Positions 13,496 through 64,000 of a stretch of 64,000 nucleotides of DNA are shown piece by piece. Location: positions 149,151 through 213,150 of IMG/VR virus record IMGVR_UViG_3300033997_000136, one strand, 5' to 3'. Both the position numbers and the translations under genes were made by a program. The notes under the pieces were generated by a model. It did no database searches, was not told where the DNA came from, and saw nothing but the letters and a program-made list of their open reading frames with translations. Within the stretch, counting starts at the first letter, position 1; every line of letters starts with the position of its first letter.

Positions 13496-16400
13496 TCATC
13501 TATCAAGTGCCAACGTTGTAGGTGGTCTACTTGGTCCACTACTCTTCGGAGCAGACTCTCGCATCTGTTCGGTTTTACGAACAGTGTTTTGAACTGCTTT
13601 ATTAACCTGTCCTTCTGGAACAGGTGCAGCATTGCTTACATTCCCTGAACGTTTACTAATGGACTCAGCAGCCGCTTCAGGGTCTAACAATAACTCACGA
13701 ATATCGCGAAGACTTCTATCCATAGACGTCTGTAGCAATACTTGAGTCGTGAGTATTTCAGCAATGTGTCGCATACTGCTTGTGGTTTGATTGGAACGAG
13801 CCGTGTTTGCTGTTTGTGTCTGTACAGACGACATTGCTACACGTTGTTGCTCTTTCTCAATTTCCCCTTGCAATTGGGAATCACTCATACTGGATGCGTT
13901 CATACCAAGTGTCATTGCAGAGAGTGAACCAGCACCTACACCAGGAATCGGATTCACTGGTGTACTTCCCACCATTTTCACAGAGTCCATCGATTCATTC
14001 TCTGGAACTGTAGTTTCTTTTGGTGGTGCCATCATCAGCATCGGTGGAACTGTTGCTGCACCTAACGTCCGTGTTTGTGGTGTAAATGATGGTGTAGGTT
14101 GTGGTGCATTTAAACTAGGTACACTACGGTTAAACGGATACAACAACGGAGCAGGTGCTGACGTCATTGATTTGACCGTTTGTTTTTGAGGTGTTGTATT
14201 TGCTAACGATTTCTCAGAACCAATCAATGATGTTTTCAATGATTTTTCCATGTTCTGTACATCACCAATTCCTTTGGTTAACGTTTGACGTTCCATATCT
14301 ACAAATGGTGATGTTAATTCGCTATACGCAGATTTTAAATGCGTACTGTCAGCAACTTTTAAGAAGAACCGTTTCTTGTCTTCTTCAGATAAATCATCAT
14401 CTAAATCGTCTAAATCAGCTGACTTGTCAATCTGATTCAAAACAGTAAGATGTGTTAAGTACACTGGTTTAAAGCGGGTTTCAAACCACTTTGCAAATCT
14501 ATCAACATGTTGTGCGTTATCTGGTTGGATACCACACGTTTCAATGATGTCATTTAAATCGTCATCATCTAACCGCGATAAGTTTGCTTGACCTGTGTCT
14601 TTATCGTAATACACATAATCCTCTAACGTAGATTCAATAGAGTTGATACGACGAACCATATCTCCATCTGTTGAATCAATACCGTATTGCGTTAAACGAT
14701 ACGTATGTAAGTCACCATTAGGTTTCCCATCAAAGTACCGCCACAACGCATACCCACCTGCTGCTGTCGCTGCGACTGCTAACCCTGGGAGTAATAGTGG
14801 AGATGCAATCACTGCACCAATAGCTGCTGCACCCGTACTGGCTGCCGCTGCCGCACCACTTGCTAACGCACTTCCAGCAGTGACTGCCAACGGAGCTGCT
14901 GCTAACGCAAGACGACCTGCTCCCGCAGCTAAACCTCCAGCACCTCTGGCTAAACTACCCGCACCTCGCGCTAAGCTTCCAGCTCCGCGTTTAAGTGCTC
15001 CACCTGCACGTCGTATTCTACCCGGTTTCTTTTGTGGAGTAGTAGGACTTGTTGTTGGTCCGCGATTACGTCCGTCCATATCGATATCAATCTCAGGAAC
15101 AAATCCGTCACCACCACCGCCAAACATATCACCCAATCCACCCAATATACCTTTCCCTTCACCCAATCCAAACAATGCAGCTAAACCACCCCCTAATTTC
15201 CCTAGAAGTGATTTTGACTTATCATGTCCTTTATGGTCTTTCATTTTACGACGCGCTTCATCGTCTTCGTTTTTCCGTTTGCTAAAGATATCTTGCCAAC
15301 TTCCTTTACGAATTCGATTTGGTTTTGGGATACGGTCATTTAACAATGCATAGATTTTATTCAATACATCATTTGACTTTCCAACACCAGTGGCAGTTTG
15401 TTGTTCAAACTGAGCTTCCACAGACGCTTCAGGAGGCAAACCAAGTGCACCCCGTACTGCACGCTTCCCTATTCGGAATCCGCCACCTAAGACCGTTCCA
15501 GCGGCTTTAAACGCAGTTGAATAGACAGACTTCACTAACCCCACAGTTTTTGTTGCAGCAGACTTCAAGAAACCACCTAGGGCTTTAAATTTACGACCAT
15601 CGGGTCCAATCAACCCTTTCTTTAAATCTTCCACACTAATCACTACATTTCCTTCATTGTCAATAACCTCACCTTTAATGTCTCGGATGGTTTTAATGAC
15701 ATCTCCAGAAACTTTATCTCTGTAAAGACCTCGTTCCATAAGTATCTTTAAAAGACGTGGTGTCTCTTCACCTTTTACGTAGACATCGGTTGGTCGATTA
15801 ACAACACCAAATATGCGCTCTTTTGCAAACGTAAACACACTACGTCCTGCTTTAAACAACGCACCGTATCCTGTCGCAGCAAAACGCCCATAGGCAAATG
15901 CAGCACTTCGAATACCCTGTCCTATTTTCACACCAATCGGCTCACCCGTTGGTGCAATCAATCTATTCTGTTCAATGTCCTCTAGTTTAATAACCAGATT
16001 ACCTTCTTTGTCGTAGACTGGACCTTTGATATCGTCAAATGAATGAATAGGTTTACCATCAGCATCAACAAACTCACCTTCCTTTAATTGCTTAGCTGTA
16101 ATAACTGGTTCCTGTTCACCTTTTAGATAAATATCGCTGACTGCTCGTGATTTACCTAATAATCCTAAACCAATGTTACGGGCACCACTTAAACCAGCAC
16201 CTGCGGCTTTTACACCTAACTTAGCACTGAGTAATGCACCTTTGCCTGCAAGTTTAAATGTTGCTGCATACGCTTTCCCTGTGAATCTCAAAAGACCCAT
16301 GGTTCCACGTTTTGCAAGACCTACACCTTTACCCGCTAATTCACCTGCTGCACCAAAGTTTCTACGAACAAACCCTGATTCATTGGCTGCAAGTGCACCA

Positions 16401-32012: not shown

Positions 32013-32067
32013 AATCATCACTCCTTAGAGAATCAATATAACTCCCATATGAATGAACATTATTAGG

Positions 32068-32079
32068 GACACACATTAT
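32068..32079 (+). promoter_or_regulatory. early promoter-like box gacaCACATTAT
   Basis: Same motif as upstream of phuZ; no ORF follows before a terminator. Confidence 0.5.
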
Positions 32080-32084
32080 TAATG

Positions 32085-32178
32085 GGATAAACCAGTTTAC
32101 TACGTGGGACGCTCATCCTTAACGATGAGTTTTTAAGGGGTGTTGTGTTTATTGCGGAATGCAACACCCCTTCTTTTT
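32085..32178 (+). ncRNA. candidate ~90-nt early small RNA
   Basis: Promoter box, ctcatc/gatgag hairpin, then terminator aaggggtgttg...caacacccctt-cttttt; only ORF is ATG-GGA-TAA. Confidence 0.35.
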
Positions 32179-32389
32179 AAGCCTACGTGCTATTCTAACG
32201 CATCATCTATGCCTTATGCATAGAACCACTTTACTTAAATCGTCAGTGTCTTAAAATCGATTACAGGACGTTTTACGTAACTCGTCATGTTGTGTATTCA
32301 GTAAATAAAAAAATACTGGGATATAACCTGATATGAACACTGGTCGTGTTGACCAATTTTACCCACACTAAAGAGAAAAGGAAAAGACA

Positions 32390-33337: not shown

Positions 33338-33365
33338 AGGAGGGAGGGCAATTGCCCTCCCTCCT
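33338..33365. terminator. bidirectional terminator (perfect palindrome)
   Basis: aggagggagggcaattgccctccctcct. Confidence 0.8.
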
Positions 33366-41874: not shown

Positions 41875-41900
41875 AAGAGAAGACCTTCGGGTCTTCTCTT
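41875..41900 (+). terminator. intrinsic terminator with cUUCGg loop
   Basis: aagagaagacc-ttcg-ggtcttctctt. Confidence 0.8.
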
Positions 41901-41933: not shown

Positions 41934-44036
41934 ATGGCTGGCATTTGTTTCCTTGAGGATTGGGCAAGATACCCCAATGCAATTGCAGACACAAAAACAA
42001 AAAACAAGTCATTTATTAAAATGGCACAAACCTACCGTTCTATGGGGATTAAAAACTATTACTTTCACCTTGCGTTATTACAGCCTCAGCTTCAAGGTGT
42101 AGACCCCTATGACCCTAATTTAACTGTACTACAGAAATCTCAAATTCTGTGGGAATGTGACAACAACATTTGGTATTTCTTACGTGAGATTGTTCGTGTA
42201 AAAGGTGCAGGTGAGACTGCTGAAGAATGTATGTACATCGCTGACCGTGCGCAGTTAGCTGCCACATGGCTTATGTTAGCGTGCATCGATTACATTCGAA
42301 TCCAACCACGACAAACTGGTAAGTCGTACGGAACCAACTGCAACACGTTGTGGTTGTTGTATTTTCATTATCAAGATGAAACGATTAACCTCATTACAAA
42401 AGATGAAAAGTTACGCCAGAGTAACATTAAGTCTTACAAAGATATTCGTGATGAGTGGCCGGATTATATCAACCGAAATACGAAGAAAGACGATAACAAC
42501 CAAGCTTCAATGTCATGTCTTTCAAGGAACAATAAGTTATTTACACACGTTGCTCAAAACTCTGAGAAGAGTGCGAACAACTTAGGTCGTGGATTAACAT
42601 CACCTTACTTGCACTTCGATGAACCGCCGTTCATTGCCTTTATTGAAAAGACAATGGTCGGTGCATTGGGTTCAACAGGTAAAGCACGTATTCGTGCTGA
42701 ACGTCGTGGTAAAGTGTTTTGTAACGTATTCACAACGACAGCAGGTGATAAAGATGACCGTGATGGTAAAGTGATTTACCAAATGTGGTCTGATGCTGCA
42801 CCGTTTAACGACATGATGTTTGACTCACTTAATCGAGAAGAACTGATTCGTCTTATTCGAACAAACATGTCTGGTGATGCTGTTACTGTCAACATTACCA
42901 TGAACCATCGTCAGTTAGGGTATGACGATGCATGGTTATTAGACAAGATAGCTGTGGCTCGTGGTAAAGGAGATGACATCGATAAAGATTACATGAACTT
43001 GTGGACAGGGGGTGGTGCGAATAGCGTTATTCCACGTCACTTAACAGAACGAGTTCGTGAATCACAGCGTACACCGCTACGTACAGATGTCAGCCGTGAA
43101 TATTACATGTTTAAGTGGTATGAAGCATTTGACCCTAGCCGCAGTTATCTACTGACAGTGGATACGTCTGATGCAGTGGGTAAGGATGATATCGGTATTA
43201 CATTAGAAGATACAGTGACTGGGAATGTGACGGGAGCTGCAGGGATTAACACAACAAACCTGCAAGACTTTGCGTACTGGGTAGCTGATTTTTTAATCAA
43301 ACACAAAAATGTAACGTTGATTATTGAAAATAAATACAATGCTCAAGTTATCATTGATATCATTTATCTACAATTACTTGCTGCGGGTGAAGATCCATTT
43401 AAACGGATATTCAATCAGATTGTGCAAAACAAGGACGATAGACGCACAGACTACGCTGAAATAGCAGGTGCAAAAGCAAAAGGTCGTATGATTGTTGATA
43501 AGTATCGTCGTGAGTTTGGTTTCTTTACGACAAGTGAATTACGTAGCTTTATGTATTCACAAACGATTATCAATGCTTGTGAAGACAGCGGTCATGGAAT
43601 TCATGATGAGAAACTTATCAATCAAATGTTAAGTCTTATTGTGAAAAACAATCGAGTCGACCACGGACCTGGTGGTCATGATGATATGGTGATTTCCTAT
43701 CTAATGGGCCAATGGTTCTTACGGTTAGGACGGAACCTTTCTTATTACGGTATCGACTACAGTCGGGTATTGAGTCAAATCAACAAAGACGTAGAAGAGA
43801 AAACTGTAGCTGAAGTCTATGAGGATACACAACAAGCGCGGTACGTTGCGCAAATTGAGGACGTCTATGAGCAGCTAAAAACTGCGAAAGACCCGTACAG
43901 TATCTTCCGTCTTGAAGCAAAACTTCAAATGCTGATGGGAAAAGTGGACCGTGTGAAAGCGGGTATACAAACGTATGATGCAATGATTGAAGAGAGTGTT
44001 CGTCAACGCAGAAATAACATCCGCATGAGACGTTAA
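41934..44036 (+). CDS. terL: terminase large subunit
   Basis: Walker A PRQTGKS, Walker B LHFDE, FTTTAG, nuclease VDTS...IENK...HDDMVIS. Confidence 0.93.
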   Translation: MAGICFLEDWARYPNAIADTKTKNKSFIKMAQTYRSMGIKNYYFHLALLQPQLQGVDPYDPNLTVLQKSQILWECDNNIWYFLREIVRVKGAGETAEECMYIADRAQLAATWLMLACIDYIRIQPRQTGKSYGTNCNTLWLLYFHYQDETINLITKDEKLRQSNIKSYKDIRDEWPDYINRNTKKDDNNQASMSCLSRNNKLFTHVAQNSEKSANNLGRGLTSPYLHFDEPPFIAFIEKTMVGALGSTGKARIRAERRGKVFCNVFTTTAGDKDDRDGKVIYQMWSDAAPFNDMMFDSLNREELIRLIRTNMSGDAVTVNITMNHRQLGYDDAWLLDKIAVARGKGDDIDKDYMNLWTGGGANSVIPRHLTERVRESQRTPLRTDVSREYYMFKWYEAFDPSRSYLLTVDTSDAVGKDDIGITLEDTVTGNVTGAAGINTTNLQDFAYWVADFLIKHKNVTLIIENKYNAQVIIDIIYLQLLAAGEDPFKRIFNQIVQNKDDRRTDYAEIAGAKAKGRMIVDKYRREFGFFTTSELRSFMYSQTIINACEDSGHGIHDEKLINQMLSLIVKNNRVDHGPGGHDDMVISYLMGQWFLRLGRNLSYYGIDYSRVLSQINKDVEEKTVAEVYEDTQQARYVAQIEDVYEQLKTAKDPYSIFRLEAKLQMLMGKVDRVKAGIQTYDAMIEESVRQRRNNIRMRR

Positions 44037-44444: not shown

Positions 44445-44474
44445 AGAGAGAGGAGGCAGACGCCTCCTCTCTCT
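44445..44474. terminator. bidirectional intrinsic terminator
   Basis: agagagaggaggc-agac-gcctcctctctct between convergent genes. Confidence 0.85.
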
Positions 44475-44479
44475 ATCTT

Positions 44480-45706
44480 TTATACGTAAAATTCCATAGC
44501 AAGCGTTCGAAGCACAATGTACAACATTAAACCAGTGCGTAACGAAGAGAGCATAGATTCATTTGTCGTTGCTGTTGCTTTCTTACAAATCGATTTGGAT
44601 TGTTCTCGGATATCAAACAACAATGGTTCTGTAGAACGAGGACTACCATATAACGATTTTAGTTTTACAAGGATTACTGCAAAACGAGTAGATGAACGCA
44701 TTAGCTCACGGTTGTTGTTTATGTAATCAAGTGCATGAAGCATGACATTATCAATCAGTTCACTGACATGTTTATCGCCCCCATGACCATGATTGTTAAC
44801 CATGTACTCAAGTGTTTCAACAAACAGTCTCTCATTCATGGTGTGAACTAAATCAACAATCACACCAATGAGTTCCTGACGGATAAATGTATCTTTATCA
44901 ATCAACACTTCATGAGCATAACGCTGCAGTTGAGAACTCTTTCTCACCAAGTCACGTAAATGGAATTCACCATCAATATTCACGGTAGATGAACGCGTTG
45001 TAATTCGAGAATTACTGTTATGCACACGTAGAAATACAGAGTACATTTTCTTTACTACTTCACGAATACGACCTTGAATATCATTTAATGATTTAACAAT
45101 ATCATCGTCAGTTGCAAAGTTTAAGATACTCGGATAACGTTTACCACGGGTATCTAAAATAGACAGTGCTCGATGGTCAATAAGTTTAGACCATGAACCA
45201 TGTTGTTTTAAACTAAACTTGTTATCAAGTGCAGCGTACGTTGCTTCCATGGTTTCACGTTTAGGTTCAAACTTAAAGTAGTTACTTCCTGTCATGAGTG
45301 ACGTGATAAAGCGATAGTGCATCACACGAATAACCGCAACACACCCTTGTTGCTTTTGTTGGGGATTTAACGTTTTACTTGTTGTGAATAAATGAATCAA
45401 GTAAAAACACGTTAAGTTAAATGTATCACTTGATACTTTAAACTCTGGGTTGATAGAGGGTAGTTTGTGTATCTCTTTTTGAAGAATGACTTCATCTACA
45501 CTTAACACTTCATCAAACCAACGATGCATGTCTGAAGCAGTAAAGACAACCCGAGGTGTGCCCATCAGATTTCCACCAAAAAAGGTGATGTTCTCTTCAC
45601 GACTGTTCACCCAGTGTCGTTCATACGTTGTAATACGTTTTAATAAAGCCGCATCAGCAGCTAAATGCCCACATTCTGTTTTGAACACTTGTAATAATGT
45701 AGCCAC
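44480..45706 (-). CDS. conserved phiKZ-like protein, probably virion-associated
   Basis: 408 aa; FFGGNLMG, VSSDTFNL, KFSLKQHGSW, RTGLMLYIVLR. Confidence 0.65.
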   Translation of the reverse strand: MATLLQVFKTECGHLAADAALLKRITTYERHWVNSREENITFFGGNLMGTPRVVFTASDMHRWFDEVLSVDEVILQKEIHKLPSINPEFKVSSDTFNLTCFYLIHLFTTSKTLNPQQKQQGCVAVIRVMHYRFITSLMTGSNYFKFEPKRETMEATYAALDNKFSLKQHGSWSKLIDHRALSILDTRGKRYPSILNFATDDDIVKSLNDIQGRIREVVKKMYSVFLRVHNSNSRITTRSSTVNIDGEFHLRDLVRKSSQLQRYAHEVLIDKDTFIRQELIGVIVDLVHTMNERLFVETLEYMVNNHGHGGDKHVSELIDNVMLHALDYINNNRELMRSSTRFAVILVKLKSLYGSPRSTEPLLFDIREQSKSICKKATATTNESMLSSLRTGLMLYIVLRTLAMEFYV

Positions 45707-46154: not shown

Positions 46155-46571
46155 ATGAACTTAACTGGCTTTTATCAAAAGAGTTATTGTCTTACCACAG
46201 GACACTGTATCAATGTCATTGGTTCAGAAGTCCACATGTACATGAAGACAGATAAGAGTATCAATTACATCGGTTCGTTAGCTGGCTTTCAAAGTCACTA
46301 CCCAGAACTGTATGCCAAGTGCAAAGAATTAGATGAAGGCTATTTAGATGTTGAGAAATCAGGATGGTCTCCTGTTTCTATTGAAATCACACGCAAAGAT
46401 AGAGTCGCGTTGCTACAGGCTATGCATAAACCCGCTGTAACGCTCTGTGTAGCATCAGACCAGCCGAACACGATTTATTTAGGCGAAGGTGTGGATGCAC
46501 TCAGTATCGCTCCGTATCGTGATTTGAGCGCGTTACAACGACTCGTCAGTATGGAGATGCATTCTGCGTAA
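46155..46571 (+). CDS. hypothetical protein
   Basis: ORF with AAGGA RBS. Confidence 0.7.
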   Translation: MNLTGFYQKSYCLTTGHCINVIGSEVHMYMKTDKSINYIGSLAGFQSHYPELYAKCKELDEGYLDVEKSGWSPVSIEITRKDRVALLQAMHKPAVTLCVASDQPNTIYLGEGVDALSIAPYRDLSALQRLVSMEMHSA

Positions 46572-47169
46572 TATTCGCTGATTTGCGTTGCCTATTTATA
46601 CTCATGATCTTTATTTAGATACCTCCGGTAGGAGTAGTAGATAAATAAAGATCATTCTATCCTTAGATAGAATTAGTTAGCGTAGCTTATATAACTTTGC
46701 TCTTTTGTTTTAATGATTGTTTCTTTTAAACTACTTTATAACTTTTATCTAAAAACTAATATCTATCTTTGATTAGATAGTAACTGAGAGAGGCTTATAA
46801 GCCTCTCTCATGGGTTATTCTATCTCTTTTATTTTTATTAAAATAATTTTATATTTGTTTGTACTTTATTTTATGTGAATAAAAGCGGAGTACAGATAAG
46901 GAACGAAGTGGATTAGATGGACGACAACCTAACTCATCGCAGCGTAGGCGCAGCGGAGGGGTACGGAACGTACACTGTAGCGGAAATAGCCGAAGCGAGA
47001 AAACCATTACTTCTATCTTTTCGAAGGGCCAAAGGCCCTTCTATGTATGTATGTATGCAGATTATAAAGTTTTTATGTAAAAAATTATTTAATGAATAAA
47101 ACAGAATAGGAGAAGCAGATAGCTTCTCTTTTTTATATGTCTTTTTAAAAAACTATTGAGAATCTAGAT
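46572..47169. other. 600-bp non-coding AT-rich, hairpin-rich locus (candidate origin or ssDNA signal)
   Basis: 14-bp IR atgatctttattta/taaataaagatcat, 26-bp palindrome 46785-46810, AT tracts, seven CGNAG motifs at 46886-46995, (TATG)4 at 47042-47057. Confidence 0.45.
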
Positions 47170-48060
47170 ATGAATGCAAAGTATGGCTATCATCTATCGT
47201 TTAATGGTGAGTTAGAGGGAAAGTGGATACCTAGACAACCCGATGGGTACGATGAGCAGAACAATAAAGATTCTACAATAGGGGAACCATCAGTCGCTCG
47301 AATTAGCGTAGCACCGACTATAGAAGGATGTATTCGTGCTATTTATCCAAACGTATTTAGATTCTTTGAAAAGAATAACTATCCTTACATTGATATGTAT
47401 GTGTACAGTCCAGAGAAGTTATTAAAGCGTGATGTTGTTTCTACAAAAGAGTTAACAACAAAACGCTATGTATGGGATGCACATGTAACAGGGGAGTTTT
47501 GGATTATCCATCCTGTGGTAATGAAACGTATTGCAAAGATACGGATAATGAATCCAGGAAAGAACAATGTGATGCATACGTATCCATTTAATGATAAGTC
47601 AGTGGGTGAATTGTATGACATACGCCCAGCAATCGTGGACTATAGTGTACGCGAATTGTATATTGATGAGGAAGTGAGAATGACCAGTCAAGAAACGAAG
47701 TTAGCTGCATTGATGACACGGTTACAAAGTAGTCAACAAATGCAAGAAGAAATGAAGAAGCTAATCCAGGAAGAAGCACAAGCTGTGCTTATTACTCCAG
47801 CGAACTACGACGAAGTAGATGCTGCTGAGTTTGCACTTGCGGTGCATTCGATGATTAAAGAACCTGAAAAGCATGTGGTGATTATTGCTGAAGAAGATGA
47901 TGGGGTGGTGTATACGGATGAACAAGGTCCTCGTGTACGTCAAGTCTCATCTATCTTAAAAGAAGCCGGTGTGACTGTGTATGACAGTGTAGACGCCTTT
48001 CAAGAAGTGATAGAAGGCCAAACTCATGTGACTGGGGATGATACCACAACGGTAGAATAA
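47170..48060 (+). CDS. two-domain protein: ART-like virion domain plus nucleoside 2-deoxyribosyltransferase-like C-terminal domain
   Basis: YHLS...WIPR...ARISVAPTIEGC...TGEFW; C-terminal VLITP...KEPEK...GVTVYDSV; in-frame internal GAGGA + ATG at 47680. Confidence 0.5.
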   Translation: MNAKYGYHLSFNGELEGKWIPRQPDGYDEQNNKDSTIGEPSVARISVAPTIEGCIRAIYPNVFRFFEKNNYPYIDMYVYSPEKLLKRDVVSTKELTTKRYVWDAHVTGEFWIIHPVVMKRIAKIRIMNPGKNNVMHTYPFNDKSVGELYDIRPAIVDYSVRELYIDEEVRMTSQETKLAALMTRLQSSQQMQEEMKKLIQEEAQAVLITPANYDEVDAAEFALAVHSMIKEPEKHVVIIAEEDDGVVYTDEQGPRVRQVSSILKEAGVTVYDSVDAFQEVIEGQTHVTGDDTTTVE

Positions 48061-48063
48061 GCG

Positions 48064-48091
48064 AAGAGAGGAGGCTACTGCCTCCTCTCTT
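48064..48091. terminator. bidirectional intrinsic terminator
   Basis: aagagaggaggc-tact-gcctcctctctt-like IR between convergent genes. Confidence 0.85.
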
Positions 48092-48096
48092 CTTAG

Positions 48097-49094: not shown

Positions 49095-50105
49095 ATGTCC
49101 GCAAAGAAAGAAATGCAAACTGCCACTCAATCCGCTGAAAAGAAACCAGCCGTATTACGGTTATGGGGATGTGGTGGTGCTGGTATCAATATTGCATCGC
49201 GTTACATTGACAGCAAACCTGAAGAAGGGTGTGCGATTATTAAGCCTGCGTTCTTAGACACCAGCGACAGTAACTTAGGTTCAATGGATTACCCTGACAA
49301 GTATCTGATTCCAGGTGTAAATGGTAGCGGTGCAGTGCGTGGTACAAATGCTGAACCTATCTCTAAAAGCATCAAAAACATTTTAGCGTCTATTTCACCA
49401 GGTGATGTAAACGTTATCATTAGCAGTGCCGGTGGTGGCAGCGGTGCGGTGTTCTCTGCGTTGCTAACAGGTGAACTTTTGGATATGAATCAGAAGGTGT
49501 TTGTGATTCTGATTGGTAGTACCGAATCGCGTATCCGTACTGAAAACACAATCAAGGCATTAAGTAACTTAGAGCTGATTGCTGAAGATACGAATCAGCC
49601 TGTGAACGTGCACTATTTGCAAAACGTAGAGAGTCGTACCAAAGTCGATAAAGATGCTATCGCTGCTATCGCCGCCTTTAGCTTAGTGACAAGCAACATG
49701 CATCTGGGTCTTGACCCTGAAGACATCCATAACTTCTTACGTCACCACCGTTTCACAGGTGCATCTCCACGCCTGACTATGTTAGACATTATTGTACAGA
49801 CTGAAAAGTCTGATGTGTCTGACAAGTTAGCATCGTACGACGCACCGTACAGTATCTTGTCCTTGTACAACAACCAAGACGATGTGCGCACCAACATCCC
49901 CGCAGATTACGACACGCAGGGTTTCTGTAACTTAGCGTCAAAGAGCTTGAGTGAACTTCACTTAATCACTCATGATGGCGTTGCAGTTATTTACAAACAG
50001 TTGTCTGACTTAAACCAAAAGATAGCAACTGCACGTGAAAGCGTGGTGCAACGTGAATCAATTGCCGCTGAAGGTGCTGTGAAAGGTAAACGTTTAGTTC
50101 TGTAA
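49095..50105 (+). CDS. phuZ: PhuZ phage tubulin
   Basis: GCGGAGINI, DTS, GSGAVR, tubulin signature GGGSG, DPEDI; AGGAG RBS. Confidence 0.93.
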   Translation: MSAKKEMQTATQSAEKKPAVLRLWGCGGAGINIASRYIDSKPEEGCAIIKPAFLDTSDSNLGSMDYPDKYLIPGVNGSGAVRGTNAEPISKSIKNILASISPGDVNVIISSAGGGSGAVFSALLTGELLDMNQKVFVILIGSTESRIRTENTIKALSNLELIAEDTNQPVNVHYLQNVESRTKVDKDAIAAIAAFSLVTSNMHLGLDPEDIHNFLRHHRFTGASPRLTMLDIIVQTEKSDVSDKLASYDAPYSILSLYNNQDDVRTNIPADYDTQGFCNLASKSLSELHLITHDGVAVIYKQLSDLNQKIATARESVVQRESIAAEGAVKGKRLVL

Positions 50106-50110
50106 AAACT

Positions 50111-50138
50111 AGAAGGAGAGGGTAACACCTCTCCTTCT
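50111..50138 (+). terminator. intrinsic terminator
   Basis: agaaggagagg-gtaaca-cctctccttct plus T tract. Confidence 0.85.
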
Positions 50139-50255
50139 TTTATCTCTTTTTTATTTTTTGTTTATAGAACGCTCTAGAATCGATTATAATAGAAAAAGAT
50201 ACATAGGTAAGCCATGTTATGTTTAGAACGCTCTACGTCTTTTGTACGCATTTTA

Positions 50256-50268
50256 AAGTATACATTAT
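50256..50268 (+). promoter_or_regulatory. early promoter-like box aagtaTACATTAT
   Basis: Recurrent motif, 35 bp upstream of ATG 50303. Confidence 0.55.
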
Positions 50269-50302
50269 TAAGATAGTGTAACCATTATAAAAAAGGAATC
50301 TC

Positions 50303-62907: not shown

Positions 62908-62916
62908 CCTAATAAC

Positions 62917-62938
62917 GAGAAGGGGTAACCCCCTTCTC
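62917..62938 (+). terminator. intrinsic terminator
   Basis: gagaagggg-taac-ccccttctc plus T tract. Confidence 0.8.
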
Positions 62939-62955
62939 TTATTTTTTGACGGGAC

Positions 62956-63357
62956 ATGAACATGGCGAAGTTATTAGCAACATTGGATACAGGTGGGTGG
63001 GTGCGAGACCCATTAACAATTGCAACGAAGTTAATGGATTACTATAAAGCAACAGAACACTCACAGTCCAATGAGTTTCAAGCAACAACGTATTCATTGG
63101 CGTATTTAGTCCAACAATACGGAAATAAACCTGAAGACTTTGCCAGTAATATGGAACGAGAGTTGCAAAGCATATTCGGTTCACATTTTGAAATGGCGAC
63201 CGTAAGTGTTAGACCCAATAAAGAAGGTGACGAAAATGGATACTTTGGTGTAGATATCGATGTAAAAATCCAGCAGGGTGGAGAAAACTATTCCCTCGGT
63301 GCTTTACTCATTACATCGTCCAGTAACGTCATTAGTTATCAAATCAAAACTGCTTAG
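62956..63357 (+). CDS. conserved hypothetical protein
   Basis: TLDTGGWV...SQS...SLAYLVQQYG; resembles a conserved phiKZ-like core gene. Confidence 0.6.
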   Translation: MNMAKLLATLDTGGWVRDPLTIATKLMDYYKATEHSQSNEFQATTYSLAYLVQQYGNKPEDFASNMERELQSIFGSHFEMATVSVRPNKEGDENGYFGVDIDVKIQQGGENYSLGALLITSSSNVISYQIKTA

Positions 63358-63375
63358 TAAAAGGTATTAAAAGTC

Positions 63376-63957
63376 ATGCAAATCCAATTAGATTTACGGA
63401 ACCATTTGATTACTCGTTTAAATCAGTTACAGGCGAATGCAAACAATCTCGCCCATCAACTTGAACACATGGTTACTGAAATTCAAGAAGTCAGTAAAGT
63501 GATTATGACTATCCCAGCGGTGATGTCTGAAGCTCAGATGCAACAAATCATAGACAACATTCAACAGAATGGTGATATTGTTTTCTCAACTGACTTTAAC
63601 CGAGCCACAGCATTGGGTTTTATTACTCACCATATTGAAGATGGTTCGCCGATTTATACATTTGAGTCAGTCCACACTGAAATCACCGTAGAGACTGCTC
63701 CAATCTATCAACGTCTGACCGAGATGTACTCTGCCGACATTAAAGCAATTATGGACGCAACAGGCAGCACAACAGTTTGGTTCTATGTAAAACCAAAACC
63801 AGTCCCTGTTGTGGATGATACCCACGTAGTACAACAAACAACTGAACAGGTTGCTGTTGAAGCAGTGAAAACTGAAACAACCAATGTGGTTGTTGAATCT
63901 CAAAACGTAACGGACCCAGTCCAAATTAACACAGCCGATGGCGGCACATCAGAATAA
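63376..63957 (+). CDS. hypothetical protein with N-terminal coiled coil
   Basis: ORF with AAGGT RBS; T/V/E-rich tail. Confidence 0.65.
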   Translation: MQIQLDLRNHLITRLNQLQANANNLAHQLEHMVTEIQEVSKVIMTIPAVMSEAQMQQIIDNIQQNGDIVFSTDFNRATALGFITHHIEDGSPIYTFESVHTEITVETAPIYQRLTEMYSADIKAIMDATGSTTVWFYVKPKPVPVVDDTHVVQQTTEQVAVEAVKTETTNVVVESQNVTDPVQINTADGGTSE

Positions 63958-63964
63958 ATAATAC

Positions 63965-63988
63965 GGACTCAGAGCATCCTCTGAGTCC
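63965..63988 (+). terminator. intrinsic terminator
   Basis: ggactcagag-catc-ctctgagtcc. Confidence 0.7.
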
Positions 63989-64000
63989 TTAACCTTGTAT

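What the first reader, a model, noticed from the sequence alone, without database searches (positions are those of the whole stretch)
46572..47169. Largest non-coding locus: AT-rich tract, long inverted repeats and a strand-biased cluster of C-GNA-G minihairpin motifs
Seen: a 14-bp IR enclosing a ctcc/ggag hairpin (46604-46655), AT-rich 46690-46880 with a 26-bp palindrome, then seven CGNAG motifs on the plus strand within 110 bp (46886, 46904, 46938, 46943, 46949, 46954, 46991), GTACG-GAA-CGTAC (46961-46973), a GC hairpin (47023-47041) and (TATG)4. Well under one CGNAG is expected by chance in that span. Known: C(GNA)G triloops are unusually stable in ssDNA, and hairpin triloops serve as N4 vRNAP promoters. 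Inference: a replication origin, priming site or packaging signal; phiKZ-like origins are poorly defined.
Basis: partly seen in the sequence, partly recalled or inferred. Interest (0 to 1): 0.6.

Follow-up and report, generated by a model that had tools for sequence, protein, structure and literature searches.

The report
Conserved non-coding RNA-like locus, jumbo phage
The largest gene-free stretch of this PhuZ-encoding jumbo phage is not junk: related phages keep a similar unit (start signal, purine-rich GCGNAG-rich segment, closing hairpin) at the same place, so it is most likely a small non-coding RNA gene set among transcription stops and starts, though a replication start site is not excluded.

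Summary
The 598-bp stretch is singular in the ~212-kb genome: it is the largest ORF-free stretch, holds the least stable (AT-richest) DNA, and has the densest CGNAG cluster on one strand.

Three of its four hairpins belong to this phage's ordinary terminator set. (TATG)4 repeats the phiKZ-type late initiator. No site of the phage's 21-member early-promoter class lies in the stretch.

The new result is conservation. Relatives with only 39-49% identity in the neighbouring core protein keep a large non-coding gap at the same place. Two lineages align to window 46803-46941 above shuffles (z 4-6), including a 15/16 match at TTATGTGAATAAAAGC. One lineage shows the same strand-specific AGCGNAR cluster. 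Burkholderia phage FLC9 shows the same plan. The called 60-aa ORF is not conserved in them.

Best reading: a conserved small RNA unit of about 170 nt (46875-47041), started at a TATG initiator and closed by a hairpin, inside a terminator- and promoter-dense spacer. No expression data exist. A transcription-primed replication origin is the main rival. ssDNA minihairpins or N4-type promoters are not supported.

The parts
46604..46655 (.). H1: long AT-rich hairpin or cruciform (14 + 3 bp arms) with a CTCC-GGTA-GGAG tip, 33 nt after the stop of the 138-aa gene.
   Evidence: It is the only hairpin of this AT-rich long type at a gene end among 52 perfect hairpins. The - strand scores 15.2 bits (E 0.004) with the group-B covariance model, on structure only.
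46655..46781 (.). AT-rich spacer (about 22% GC) with two small palindromes built on CTATC/GATAG (46655-46672 and 46762-46781).
   Evidence: It is part of the genome's global minimum of duplex stability.
46785..46810 (+). H2: perfect 26-bp palindrome, a GA-rich 11-12-bp stem of the same kind as this phage's standard terminators.
   Evidence: 47 of 52 such hairpins lie at gene ends.
46811..46870 (+). T-rich block (GGGTTATTCTATCTCTTTTA...) and the AT-richest 60 nt of the genome (10% GC). It aligns with the equivalent block of group B and shares words with group C.
46871..46886 (+). Conserved 16-mer TTATGTGAATAAAAGC containing a TATG initiator (46872-46875; proposed first base G46875).
   Evidence: It matches 15/16 in the 49%-identity relative and is unique in both genomes. 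Shuffle P is 0.011. ATAAAAGCGGA is identical in group B. TTATGTG also precedes the FLC9 cluster. The role of TATG is taken from phiKZ work (PMC7598289).
46875..47041 (+). Proposed small RNA body: purine-rich (68% R), 7-8 CGNAG, 5 GCGNAR, 7 GGA, ending in hairpin H3.
   Evidence: Transcription is inferred, not observed.
46938..46959 (+). Tandem 11-bp duplication CGCAGCGTAGG / CGCAGCGGAGG. It supplies 4 of the 7 CGNAG and folds into a small hairpin.
46961..46973 (+). GTACG-GAA-CGTAC hairpin.
   Evidence: Group A relatives carry GTAC-GNGA-GTAC hairpins in their conserved element; this is a resemblance only.
46917..47099 (+). ORF60, called as a gene by JGI; judged not to be a conserved gene.
   Evidence: No homologues. 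Low-confidence Atlas model. Codon usage is ambiguous. It runs through H3 and (TATG)4. Its ATG and frame are absent from the aligned group B and FLC9 units, whose longest forward ORFs are 16-28 aa.
47023..47041 (+). H3: 8-bp GC hairpin with a GAAGGGC stem like two other terminators of the genome, with no T run after it. It is followed at once by TATG.
47042..47057 (+). (TATG)4: four overlapping copies of the phiKZ-type late initiator. TATGTATGCAGA recurs 25-29 nt upstream of another gene.
   Evidence: PMC7598289
47108..47130 (+). H4: intrinsic-terminator-like hairpin with a T run.
47136..47139 (+). TATG 34 nt upstream of the 296-aa gene (47170-48060), whose N-terminal domain is a 'phage structural protein' in phiR1-37. 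It is the candidate late start for that gene.

Best explanation
The locus is a compound transcriptional spacer that holds a conserved small non-coding transcription unit.

Proposed order of events:
1. Transcripts of the upstream small genes stop at H1 and H2.
2. A TATG-type initiator at 46872-46875, of the kind used by phiKZ non-virion RNA polymerase, starts an RNA near G46875. It sits in the most easily melted DNA of the genome.
3. This RNA is about 170 nt, purine-rich, and carries an array of (A)GCGNAG / GGAG words and small hairpins. It ends at hairpin H3.
4. H3 is followed directly by four reiterated TATG initiators, then terminator H4 and a last TATG, which serve the downstream structural-type gene.

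Shown:
- the anatomy;
- its uniqueness in the genome;
- that H2, H3 and H4 match the phage's standard terminator set;
- that the left-central part (46803-46941) is conserved in related phages while the ORF is not.

Inferred:
- that the unit is transcribed;
- its ends;
- that it acts as RNA.

My guess for its action is a decoy that presents single-stranded purine motifs to a protein or to a pyrimidine-rich RNA. This is the least supported step.
For: 1. The locus is unique in the genome: largest ORF-free stretch, global minimum of duplex stability, only CGNAG cluster of 5 or more, top AGCGNAR cluster, purine island.

2. Terminator vocabulary: 52 perfect hairpins of 10 bp or more, 47 at gene ends, with the same GA-rich stems and TCTATCT/T-rich tails as H2 and H4. 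At least 7 are followed at once by TATG, as H3 is. H4 is called by the terminator scan.

3. Positional conservation: relatives fetched through the neighbouring core protein (homologue of phiKZ gp032) nearly all have a 270-630-nt ORF-free gap between that gene and the DUF7484/PhuZ genes. Burkholderia phage FLC9 has a 719-nt unannotated gap there.

4. Sequence conservation: local alignment of window 46780-47075 with group B gives z 5.6-6.4 (P <= 0.0025), and with group C z 4.3-4.6. Reverse-strand controls stay at background. There is a 15/16 match of a 16-mer that is unique in both genomes. ATAAAAGCGGA is identical in group B. A covariance model built from group B alone puts its two best hits in 22 kb inside this IGR, one at the expected place 46873-46977 (E 0.16).

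5. Shared motif array: the AGCGNAR cluster (4-6 copies, one strand only) is the maximum of each group B locus and lies in its gap. FLC9 has TTATGTG, then four GCGNAG in 34 nt, then a hairpin with a T tail.

6. The related gaps look structured. Group A has 33 predicted pairs, 8 with compensatory change and many G-U in this orientation. Group B has a long helix with compensatory changes.

7. ORF60 is not conserved.

8. Background: TATG is the late initiator in phiKZ (PMC7598289), and intergenic promoter-plus-terminator sRNAs have been mapped in 201phi2-1 (PMC11512511).
Against: - No RNA data exist. All sequencing runs that hold the phage are DNA contigs of near-identical strains.
- The proposed RNA folds only modestly better than shuffles (z -1.9).
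- H3 lacks a U tract.
- Profile HMMs built from the relatives do not find the window, and the covariance-model hit at the expected place is weak (E 0.16). Alignments to group A and to FLC9 are not significant. Homology therefore rests on pairwise alignment statistics and shared short blocks chosen after inspection.
- TATG is a 4-mer and common (1407 in the genome). No extended late-promoter consensus could be derived.
- Conservation of a promoter-plus-structured-RNA unit flanked by very AT-rich DNA is equally what a transcription-primed origin would look like.
Confidence: 0.5

Rival explanations
1. Replication origin or priming site. Transcription from the TATG initiator through the purine-rich (G over C) segment leaves a stable RNA-DNA hybrid. 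That hybrid primes DNA synthesis, and the extremely AT-rich flanks act as unwinding elements. This is the T4 oriF/oriG, T7 or ColE1 logic.
For: - The locus holds the genome's global minimum of duplex stability on both sides of a GC- and purine-rich island.
- It is a unique locus, conserved in position in relatives.
- G5-6 W3 G5-6 blocks occur in groups A, B and C.
- No origin is defined for this phage family (my own knowledge; the paper search gave none).
Against: - Cumulative GC skew rises monotonically with no turning point at the locus. Its detrended extremes lie elsewhere, although skew here is dominated by gene orientation.
- There are no iterons beyond one 11-bp duplication and short words that belong to the terminator vocabulary.
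- No initiator gene is recognisable next to it.
- The window lacks the G-run block seen in relatives.
- The phiKZ/PhiPA3 lineage has no gap at this place.
Confidence: 0.17
2. A small protein gene. ORF60 (46917-47099) is translated into a 60-aa ORFan protein, and the CGNAG words are a by-product of Ala-Glu / GCN-GAR codons.
For: - JGI's caller predicts it.
- G-first codon periodicity: the first 35 codons score like weak genes of this region (0.13 per codon against 0.10 and 0.00 for the neighbours). Only 4.4% of open off-frame windows score as high.
- The stop lies 9 nt before H4.
- Genes under 60 aa exist elsewhere in the genome.
Against: - No homologue by word search, tblastn, Pfam or PHROGs.
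- The Atlas model is poor (pLDDT 0.55).
- The last 25 codons look non-coding and run through a terminator-type hairpin and (TATG)4.
- The AAGGA box sits 14 nt from the ATG, where the genome's mode is 7.
- The aligned units of group B and FLC9 lack the ATG and have stops in all frames, with a longest ORF of 16-28 aa.
- An open frame of this size is expected by chance in roughly 1 in 7 such stretches (my estimate from composition).
Confidence: 0.08
3. A purely regulatory spacer. Stacked terminators insulate the downstream late structural-type gene from upstream transcription. The conserved blocks are only promoter and terminator vocabulary, and the purine-rich core is a decayed remnant with no function of its own.
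For: - H2, H3, H4 and the TCTATCT tails are standard vocabulary.
- The other AT-rich extremes of the genome are also terminator-plus-promoter spacers.
- The locus lies in a variable region whose gene content differs between relatives.
Against: - The alignment with group B runs about 65 nt into the purine-rich body, beyond any promoter.
- The same strand-specific AGCGNAR array recurs in group B and FLC9.
- The hairpins are perfect, not decayed.
- Saturated divergence (39-49% aa in a core protein) should have erased a neutral remnant.
Confidence: 0.15
4. ssDNA elements: C(GNA)G minihairpins acting as N4-type hairpin promoters. A packaging (pac) signal near the terminase gene is filed here as well.
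For: - The CGNAG enrichment is strand-biased.
- The locus lies 2.5 kb downstream of terL.
- The genome assembles as a circle, as expected for headful packaging.
Against: - Only 2 of 7 CGNAG (46904, 46949) can add a second base pair.
- The ssDNA fold of the core is not better than shuffles (z -0.3, 72 of 200 shuffles fold as well).
- The phage has a multisubunit RNAP piece and no single-subunit RNAP domain was detected.
- No read ends or joints were seen, but only contigs were available.
Confidence: 0.05

Closest known systems
Intergenic small RNAs of giant Pseudomonas phages 201phi2-1 and phiKZ, mapped by ONT-cappable-seq (PMC11512511; PMC10914365)
   Same: Same virus family context (PhuZ, gp032 homologue, multisubunit RNAP). 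Short units in which a terminator follows closely on a phage promoter, lying in intergenic regions. One such sRNA is conserved between genera by position and structure.
   Different: There is no sequence relation. The phiKZ/PhiPA3 lineage has no gap at this place. The published conserved sRNA lies upstream of the tail gene gp182, not near gp032. This unit has no expression data. Its GCGNAG array is not described there.
phiKZ late promoters, T(-3)ATG(+1), read by the non-virion RNAP (PMC7598289)
   Same: TATG lies directly before the conserved body (46872-46875). It occurs four times in tandem after H3, again 34 nt before the downstream gene, and after several terminators of the genome.
   Different: It is only a 4-mer. 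No start site is mapped in this phage, and no extended consensus was found. Group B has TATGG at a different spacing.
Transcription-primed phage and plasmid origins (T4 oriF/oriG, T7 primary origin, ColE1 RNA II)
   Same: A promoter, then a transcript with G-rich or purine-rich non-template strand, next to very AT-rich and easily unwound DNA. A single special locus per genome.
   Different: No evidence of replication starts, no skew signal, and no known initiator or RNase H-type processing site. These systems are recalled from general knowledge and were not tested here.
Protein-sponge sRNAs with repeated GGA motifs (CsrB, RsmY/RsmZ)
   Same: A purine-rich RNA with many GGA words (7 in about 110 nt), one of them in a hairpin loop (46961-46973).
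   Different: Rfam models give no hit. Seven GGA is close to the roughly 4 expected from composition. The repeated word is (A)GCGNAG rather than ANGGA. The host is unknown.
d(GCGAAGC)-type GNA-triloop minihairpins and N4 virion-RNAP hairpin promoters
   Same: CGNAG words are enriched on one strand, and there is one GAA-triloop hairpin.
   Different: Most copies lack a second closing pair. There is no ssDNA folding signal. The polymerase type differs.

Membership tests
Any Rfam 15 RNA family | Covariance-model score at or above the family's gathering threshold | tested here: not met
   No hit in the window at gathering scores. In 46400-47300 the best E-value is 0.14, far below gathering. No hit falls in the equivalent gaps of relatives.
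Intrinsic (factor-independent) terminator | GC-rich stem-loop followed at once by a T/U run, downstream of a gene | tested here: met
   Met for H4 (47108-47130). H2 has the stem but its T-rich tail starts about 12 nt later. H3 has the stem but no T run. All three share stems with the genome's 52 perfect hairpins.
phiKZ-type late promoter | TATG overlapping the transcription start | tested here: met
   TATG lies at 46872, 47042-47057 (four copies) and 47136. The motif alone is weak evidence.
phiKZ-type late promoter | Mapped 5' end at the G of TATG, late timing | not testable with these tools
   No RNA run holds the phage.
Early-promoter class of this phage (AAACATACATTAT..GTGA, 21 sites) | Position-weight score comparable to the 21 sites (19.7 or more) | tested here: not met
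   The best score in the IGR is 4.0.
Conserved non-coding unit of the related uncultured phages (groups B and C) | Same genomic neighbourhood and strand relative to the gp032 homologue | tested here: met
Conserved non-coding unit of the related uncultured phages (groups B and C) | Sequence similarity above chance | tested here: inconclusive
   Pairwise local alignment gives z 4.2-6.4 for L011, L015 and L006, with reverse-strand controls at background. nhmmer finds nothing. The covariance model gives E 0.16 at the expected place.
Conserved non-coding unit of the related uncultured phages (groups B and C) | Strand-specific AGCGNAR array | tested here: met
   Window: 4 copies, the genome maximum. 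Group B: 4-6 copies in the gap and 0 on the other strand. Groups A and C have only 1.
Iteron/DUE-type replication origin | AT-rich unwinding element | tested here: met
   Global minimum of GC and of nearest-neighbour stability at 60-300 nt.
Iteron/DUE-type replication origin | Three or more direct repeats (iterons), and a GC-skew turning point | tested here: not met
   Only one 2-copy 11-mer, plus short words shared with terminator tails. There is no skew extreme at the locus.
Iteron/DUE-type replication origin | Replication starts or a copy-number peak | not testable with these tools
   Only assembled contigs were available.
C(GNA)G ssDNA minihairpins / N4 hairpin promoters | Stem of at least 2 bp closing a GNA triloop, and ssDNA folding above background | tested here: not met
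   Only 2 of 7 can add a second pair (read). DNA fold z is -0.3.
Protein-coding gene (ORF60) | Homologues, or a conserved open frame in relatives | tested here: not met
Protein-coding gene (ORF60) | Codon usage like the genome's genes | tested here: inconclusive
   The first 35 codons are weakly gene-like and the tail is non-coding-like.

The most novel reading that the evidence does not exclude
The locus is the replication origin of this clade of PhuZ-encoding jumbo phages. A conserved TATG-started, purine-rich primer RNA forms an R-loop between the two most easily melted DNA segments of the genome. That would make it the first sequence-defined origin for nucleus-forming-type jumbo phages.
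Probability: 0.15. Interest if true: 0.85.

Novelty: new member of a known kind. Interest (0 to 1): 0.55.

Why it matters
Jumbo phages of the phiKZ type run their own transcription and replication, but their non-coding elements are barely charted. Only a few small RNAs have been mapped, in two Pseudomonas phages, and I know of no defined origin.

This locus is a non-coding unit that has survived divergence down to about 40% protein identity in a neighbouring core gene. It has a recognisable plan (TATG, GCGNAG-rich purine body, hairpin), and that plan also appears in a cultured phage, Burkholderia phage FLC9.

The question is therefore directly testable at the bench. One RNA-end mapping experiment and one marker-frequency experiment in FLC9 would decide between a new conserved sRNA family and an origin.

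The work also yields a working regulatory vocabulary for this uncultured phage: 21 early promoters, the terminator set, and terminator-TATG junctions.

Tried and rejected
- **tRNA/tmRNA scan:** none found.
- **Rfam:** nothing at gathering or permissive thresholds, in the window or in relatives.
- **DNA similarity to cultured phages and plasmids:** none for the IGR, its core, or the relatives' elements.
- **Exact core pattern in IMG/VR:** none.
- **The conserved 16-mer in IMG/VR:** 17 hits. Two lie in the relative's contigs. The other 15 have no related genes nearby and are taken as chance.
- **Paralogous copies in the genome:** none.
- **Public runs:** 20 runs hold the phage or close strains (97-99%). 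The four laid were contigs only, including the one labelled RNA-Seq.
- **A CGNAG cluster in the 49% relative:** it turned out to be a Thr/Ser-type coding repeat in a 903-aa gene and is unrelated.
- **Synteny of the downstream 296-aa gene in Klebsiella phages:** no large gap there.
- **Ralstonia phage RP12:** it has two large gaps but no clear unit.
- **PhiPA3:** no gap.
- **GC skew:** uninformative, because it rises monotonically with gene orientation.
- **sigma-70 promoter scan:** below shuffle expectation.
- **TGAATAAAA and CTATCT as promoter or iteron candidates:** the first is too rare to judge, and the second belongs to terminator tails.
- **Late-promoter consensus beyond TATG:** none.
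- **Profile HMMs of the relatives against the genome:** negative.
- **Covariance model with default filters:** missed the locus.
- **Ribosome-coupled attenuation by ORF60:** considered. I set it aside because phiKZ-like phages separate transcription from translation. I did not test for the nuclear-shell protein here.
- **Not run:** the large HMMER protein search, because an ORFan result would not have changed the verdict. Also a formal pair count with a typed structure string, to avoid long typed text.
- **Genetic code:** no code other than table 11 was used.
Full report
**Context**

The window is the last 64 kb of a 213,150-bp IMG/VR record from a subsurface metagenome.
- The first 1,085 bp of the record repeat at its end at 96.9% identity. 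A second contig of 213,073 bp carries the same locus in its middle. The genome is therefore a circularly assembling molecule of about 212,065 bp.
- It encodes a large terminase (41934-44036), a PhuZ tubulin (49095-50105) and a DUF7484 protein.
- It also encodes a 408-aa protein on the - strand (44480-45706) that is the homologue of phiKZ gp032 / PhiPA3 gp017, and a beta-like RNA polymerase piece.
- This makes it a distant member of the phiKZ-like jumbo phages. The nearest cultured relatives reach only 30-40% identity in the 408-aa protein; the best is Burkholderia phage FLC9 at 40%.

- Seven plus-strand CGNAG in 110 bp is the only cluster of five or more in the whole record. The mean is 0.29 per 110 bp.
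- Against dinucleotide shuffles of the 127-nt core alone, 1.3 are expected and none of 5,000 shuffles reaches 7.
- Four of the seven come from one 11-bp tandem duplication (46938-46959). Without one copy, P is about 0.001.
- The stretch is the largest in the genome without an ORF over 60 aa: 598 nt against 383 for the next.
- Its flanks are the AT-richest and least stable DNA of the genome at every scale from 60 to 300 nt. The 200-nt window from 46683 has 22% GC and lies about 5 SD from the mean.
- The core 46884-47010 is a GC-rich (99.7-99.9th percentile) and purine-rich (99.96th percentile) island.

**Much of the stretch is ordinary regulatory vocabulary**

- The genome has 52 perfect hairpins of 10 bp or more, 47 of them at gene ends. 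They have GA-rich 5' arms and tails such as TCTATCT or T runs.
- H2 (46785-46810), H3 (47023-47041) and H4 (47108-47130) are of this kind. H4 is called as an intrinsic terminator.
- The enrichment of CTATC/GATAG words (9 in 600 bp, the genome maximum) is largely explained by such tails and by two small palindromes.
- At least seven of the hairpins are followed at once by TATG, as H3 is.
- TATG is the late initiator read by the phiKZ non-virion RNA polymerase, with all four bases required (PMC7598289). The string TATGTATGCAGA recurs 25-29 nt upstream of another gene.
- I also found the phage's main conserved promoter class: 21 sites, all on the + strand, of the AT-rich type described for early promoters of such phages (PMC7598289). 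None lies in this stretch.

**What the core is not**

- It contains no tRNA, and no Rfam family matches.
- It has no copy elsewhere in the genome and no DNA similarity to cultured phages or plasmids.
- As single-stranded DNA it folds no better than shuffles (z -0.3). Only two of the seven CGNAG can add a second closing pair. The minihairpin idea therefore has no support.
- Cumulative GC skew rises monotonically and has no extreme here.
- ORF60 (46917-47099), which JGI called as a gene, has no homologue and a poor predicted fold. Its Shine-Dalgarno-like box is at an unusual spacing. Its tail runs through H3 and (TATG)4 and looks non-coding. Only its first 35 codons are weakly gene-like.

**The decisive evidence is comparative**

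I fetched relatives through the 408-aa protein.
- The backbone terL - gp032 homologue - ... - DUF7484 - PhuZ is conserved. The genes between differ.
- Nearly every relative has an ORF-free gap of 270-630 nt in that interval. FLC9 has an unannotated gap of 719 nt there. PhiPA3 does not.

Read in the window's orientation, the gaps fall into three groups.

*Group C (49% identity)*
- It shares a 16-mer, 15 of 16 identical, with window 46871-46886 (TTATGTGAATAAAAGC).
- The 16-mer is unique in both genomes. The shuffle P is 0.011.
- In all of IMG/VR the pattern occurs 17 times. Two of those are in this relative's contigs.

*Group B (39-40% identity)*
- It aligns with window 46803-46941: the T-rich block after the hairpin, a TATG, the identical word ATAAAAGCGGA, and about 65 nt of the purine-rich body.
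- The z scores are 5.6-6.4, with the reverse strand at background.
- Group B also carries 4-6 AGCGNAR words on that strand and none on the other. That is the maximum of each 13-kb locus. The window's 4 are the maximum of its genome.
- Its unit ends in a hairpin followed by CTATG.

*Group A*
- It is not alignable to the window.
- It shows a strongly conserved element of about 230 nt with 33 predicted pairs, 8 of them with compensatory changes, many G-U pairs in this orientation, and a GTAC-GNGA-GTAC hairpin.
- Group B likewise has a long helix with compensatory changes.

*FLC9*
- It shows the plan in miniature: TTATGTG, four GCGNAG in 34 nt, then a GC hairpin with a T tail.
- Its alignment to the window is not significant.

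*Limits of this evidence*
- Profile HMMs do not connect the groups.
- A covariance model built from group B alone finds the window only with filters off. Its two best hits in 22 kb then both lie in this stretch. One is at the expected place (46873-46977, E 0.16). The other is on hairpin H1 on the opposite strand and reflects structure only.
- I rate homology with groups B and C as moderately supported.

*ORF60 in the relatives*
- In the aligned units of group B and FLC9 the ATG of ORF60 is absent.
- All three forward frames are closed, with a longest ORF of 16-28 aa.
- What is conserved is therefore not a protein.

**Interpretation**

The anatomy that recurs is: an upstream terminator, a T-rich block, a TATG, a purine-rich body rich in (A)GCGNAG and GGAG words, a hairpin, and then the next gene's TATG. 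This is the anatomy of a small independent transcription unit.
- Such promoter-plus-terminator units in intergenic regions have been mapped as sRNAs in 201phi2-1 (PMC11512511).
- I therefore read 46875-47041 as a conserved small RNA of about 170 nt.
- I read the rest of the stretch as stacked terminators and late initiators that separate the upstream small genes from the downstream structural-type gene.
- What the RNA does is unknown. An array of exposed purine words suggests a decoy for a protein or for a pyrimidine-rich RNA.
- The words are not the ANGGA of Csr/Rsm sponges, and Rfam's models for those do not match.

**Main rival**

The main rival is a transcription-primed origin.
- A unique, conserved locus in which a promoter drives a G-over-C, purine-rich transcript between the two most meltable segments of the genome is what such an origin would look like.
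- Nothing I could run excludes it.
- It lacks iterons, a skew signal and a recognisable initiator gene.
- I give it about one chance in six.

**What could not be done**

- No RNA run holds the phage. The public runs that hold it are contigs of near-identical strains (97-99%) from subsurface, soil, freshwater and wastewater samples.
- Expression, transcript ends, replication starts and packaging ends are therefore all untested.
- The relatives are few and unevenly spaced, so covariation that includes the window could not be tested.

**Verdict**

Its general claim of a functional non-coding locus is supported by conservation. Most likely this is a new, conserved small-RNA unit of a clade of phiKZ-like phages, embedded in a terminator- and promoter-dense spacer. 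An origin remains possible.

Noticed in passing
genome record 1-1085 and 212066-213150 (window 62916-64000): The two ends of the record repeat each other at 96.9% identity. A second contig of 213,073 bp (Ga0247725_1000040) is a different permutation. The genome is probably a complete, circularly assembling molecule of about 212 kb with two strains in the sample, although CheckV rates it 77% complete. One contig carrying ORF60 is listed as 304,688 bp, which may be a concatemer.
   Followed up: partly
window 8583, 30135, 32057, 48996, 50246, 58506, 58632 (+ strand) and 14 more sites upstream of the window: A 21-member promoter class..TTTCAAACATACATTAT.A..GTGA, all on the + strand and upstream of genes (including phuZ). 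It is probably the early (virion RNAP) promoter of this phage.
   Followed up: partly
whole genome; e.g. window 33338-33365, 41875-41900, 44445-44474, 48063-48092: There are 52 perfect hairpins of 10 bp or more with GA-rich arms, 47 at gene ends. Several are followed at once by (C)TATG, which suggests fused terminator and late-promoter junctions.
   Followed up: partly
window 50106-50302: The spacer before the 148-aa gene holds a terminator, two copies of TAGAACGCTCTA about 70 nt apart, and an early-type promoter.
   Followed up: no
L007-L010, L014, L016, L017, L027, L029 (e.g. L008:2015-2285, - strand): An uncultured group of related jumbo phages shares a strongly conserved non-coding element of about 230 nt with G6-T3-G6, AAAGCGAAGC and a GTAC-GNGA-GTAC hairpin. 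Eight of its pairs have compensatory changes. It is not in Rfam and has no match in cultured phages.
   Followed up: partly
L052 (Burkholderia phage FLC9, LC667451.1 record 13752-14470): A 719-nt unannotated gap upstream of gp22/gp23 holds TTATGTG, four GCGNAG in 34 nt and a hairpin with a T tail on the complement strand. It also holds CCGCCGCGCC-type GC blocks like those in groups B and C.
   Followed up: partly
window 46592-46712 (- strand): Hairpin H1 read on the - strand is the best hit (15.2 bits, E 0.004 in 22 kb) of the covariance model built from group B's long helix. Its tip, CTCC-TACC-GGAG, resembles YCC-TAC-GGR in group B. I cannot tell whether this is chance or an inverted homologue.
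   Followed up: no
window 46574-46591 with 46939-46957: The sequence just after the stop of the 138-aa gene can pair over 17 bp (with G-U) with the tandem 11-mers of the core, 365 nt away. The 49% relative has a perfect 9-bp GC inverted repeat spanning about 385 nt of its gap.
   Followed up: no
L006:7321-10032 (- strand of the locus): A 903-aa gene next to the gp032 homologue of the 49% relative contains a CTCGTAGT-type repeat. It mimics a CGNAG cluster on the other strand.
   Followed up: yes
genome 145042-145424 and window 32022-32389: The next-largest ORF-free stretches contain plausible genes under 60 aa, including a hydrophobic peptide. Micro-genes therefore exist in this genome and may be under-called.
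   Followed up: no
window 47612-47738: In sample 3300034073 the assembly breaks inside the 296-aa gene. Two contigs overlap there by about 125 bp at 100% identity. This is probably an assembly artefact.
   Followed up: partly
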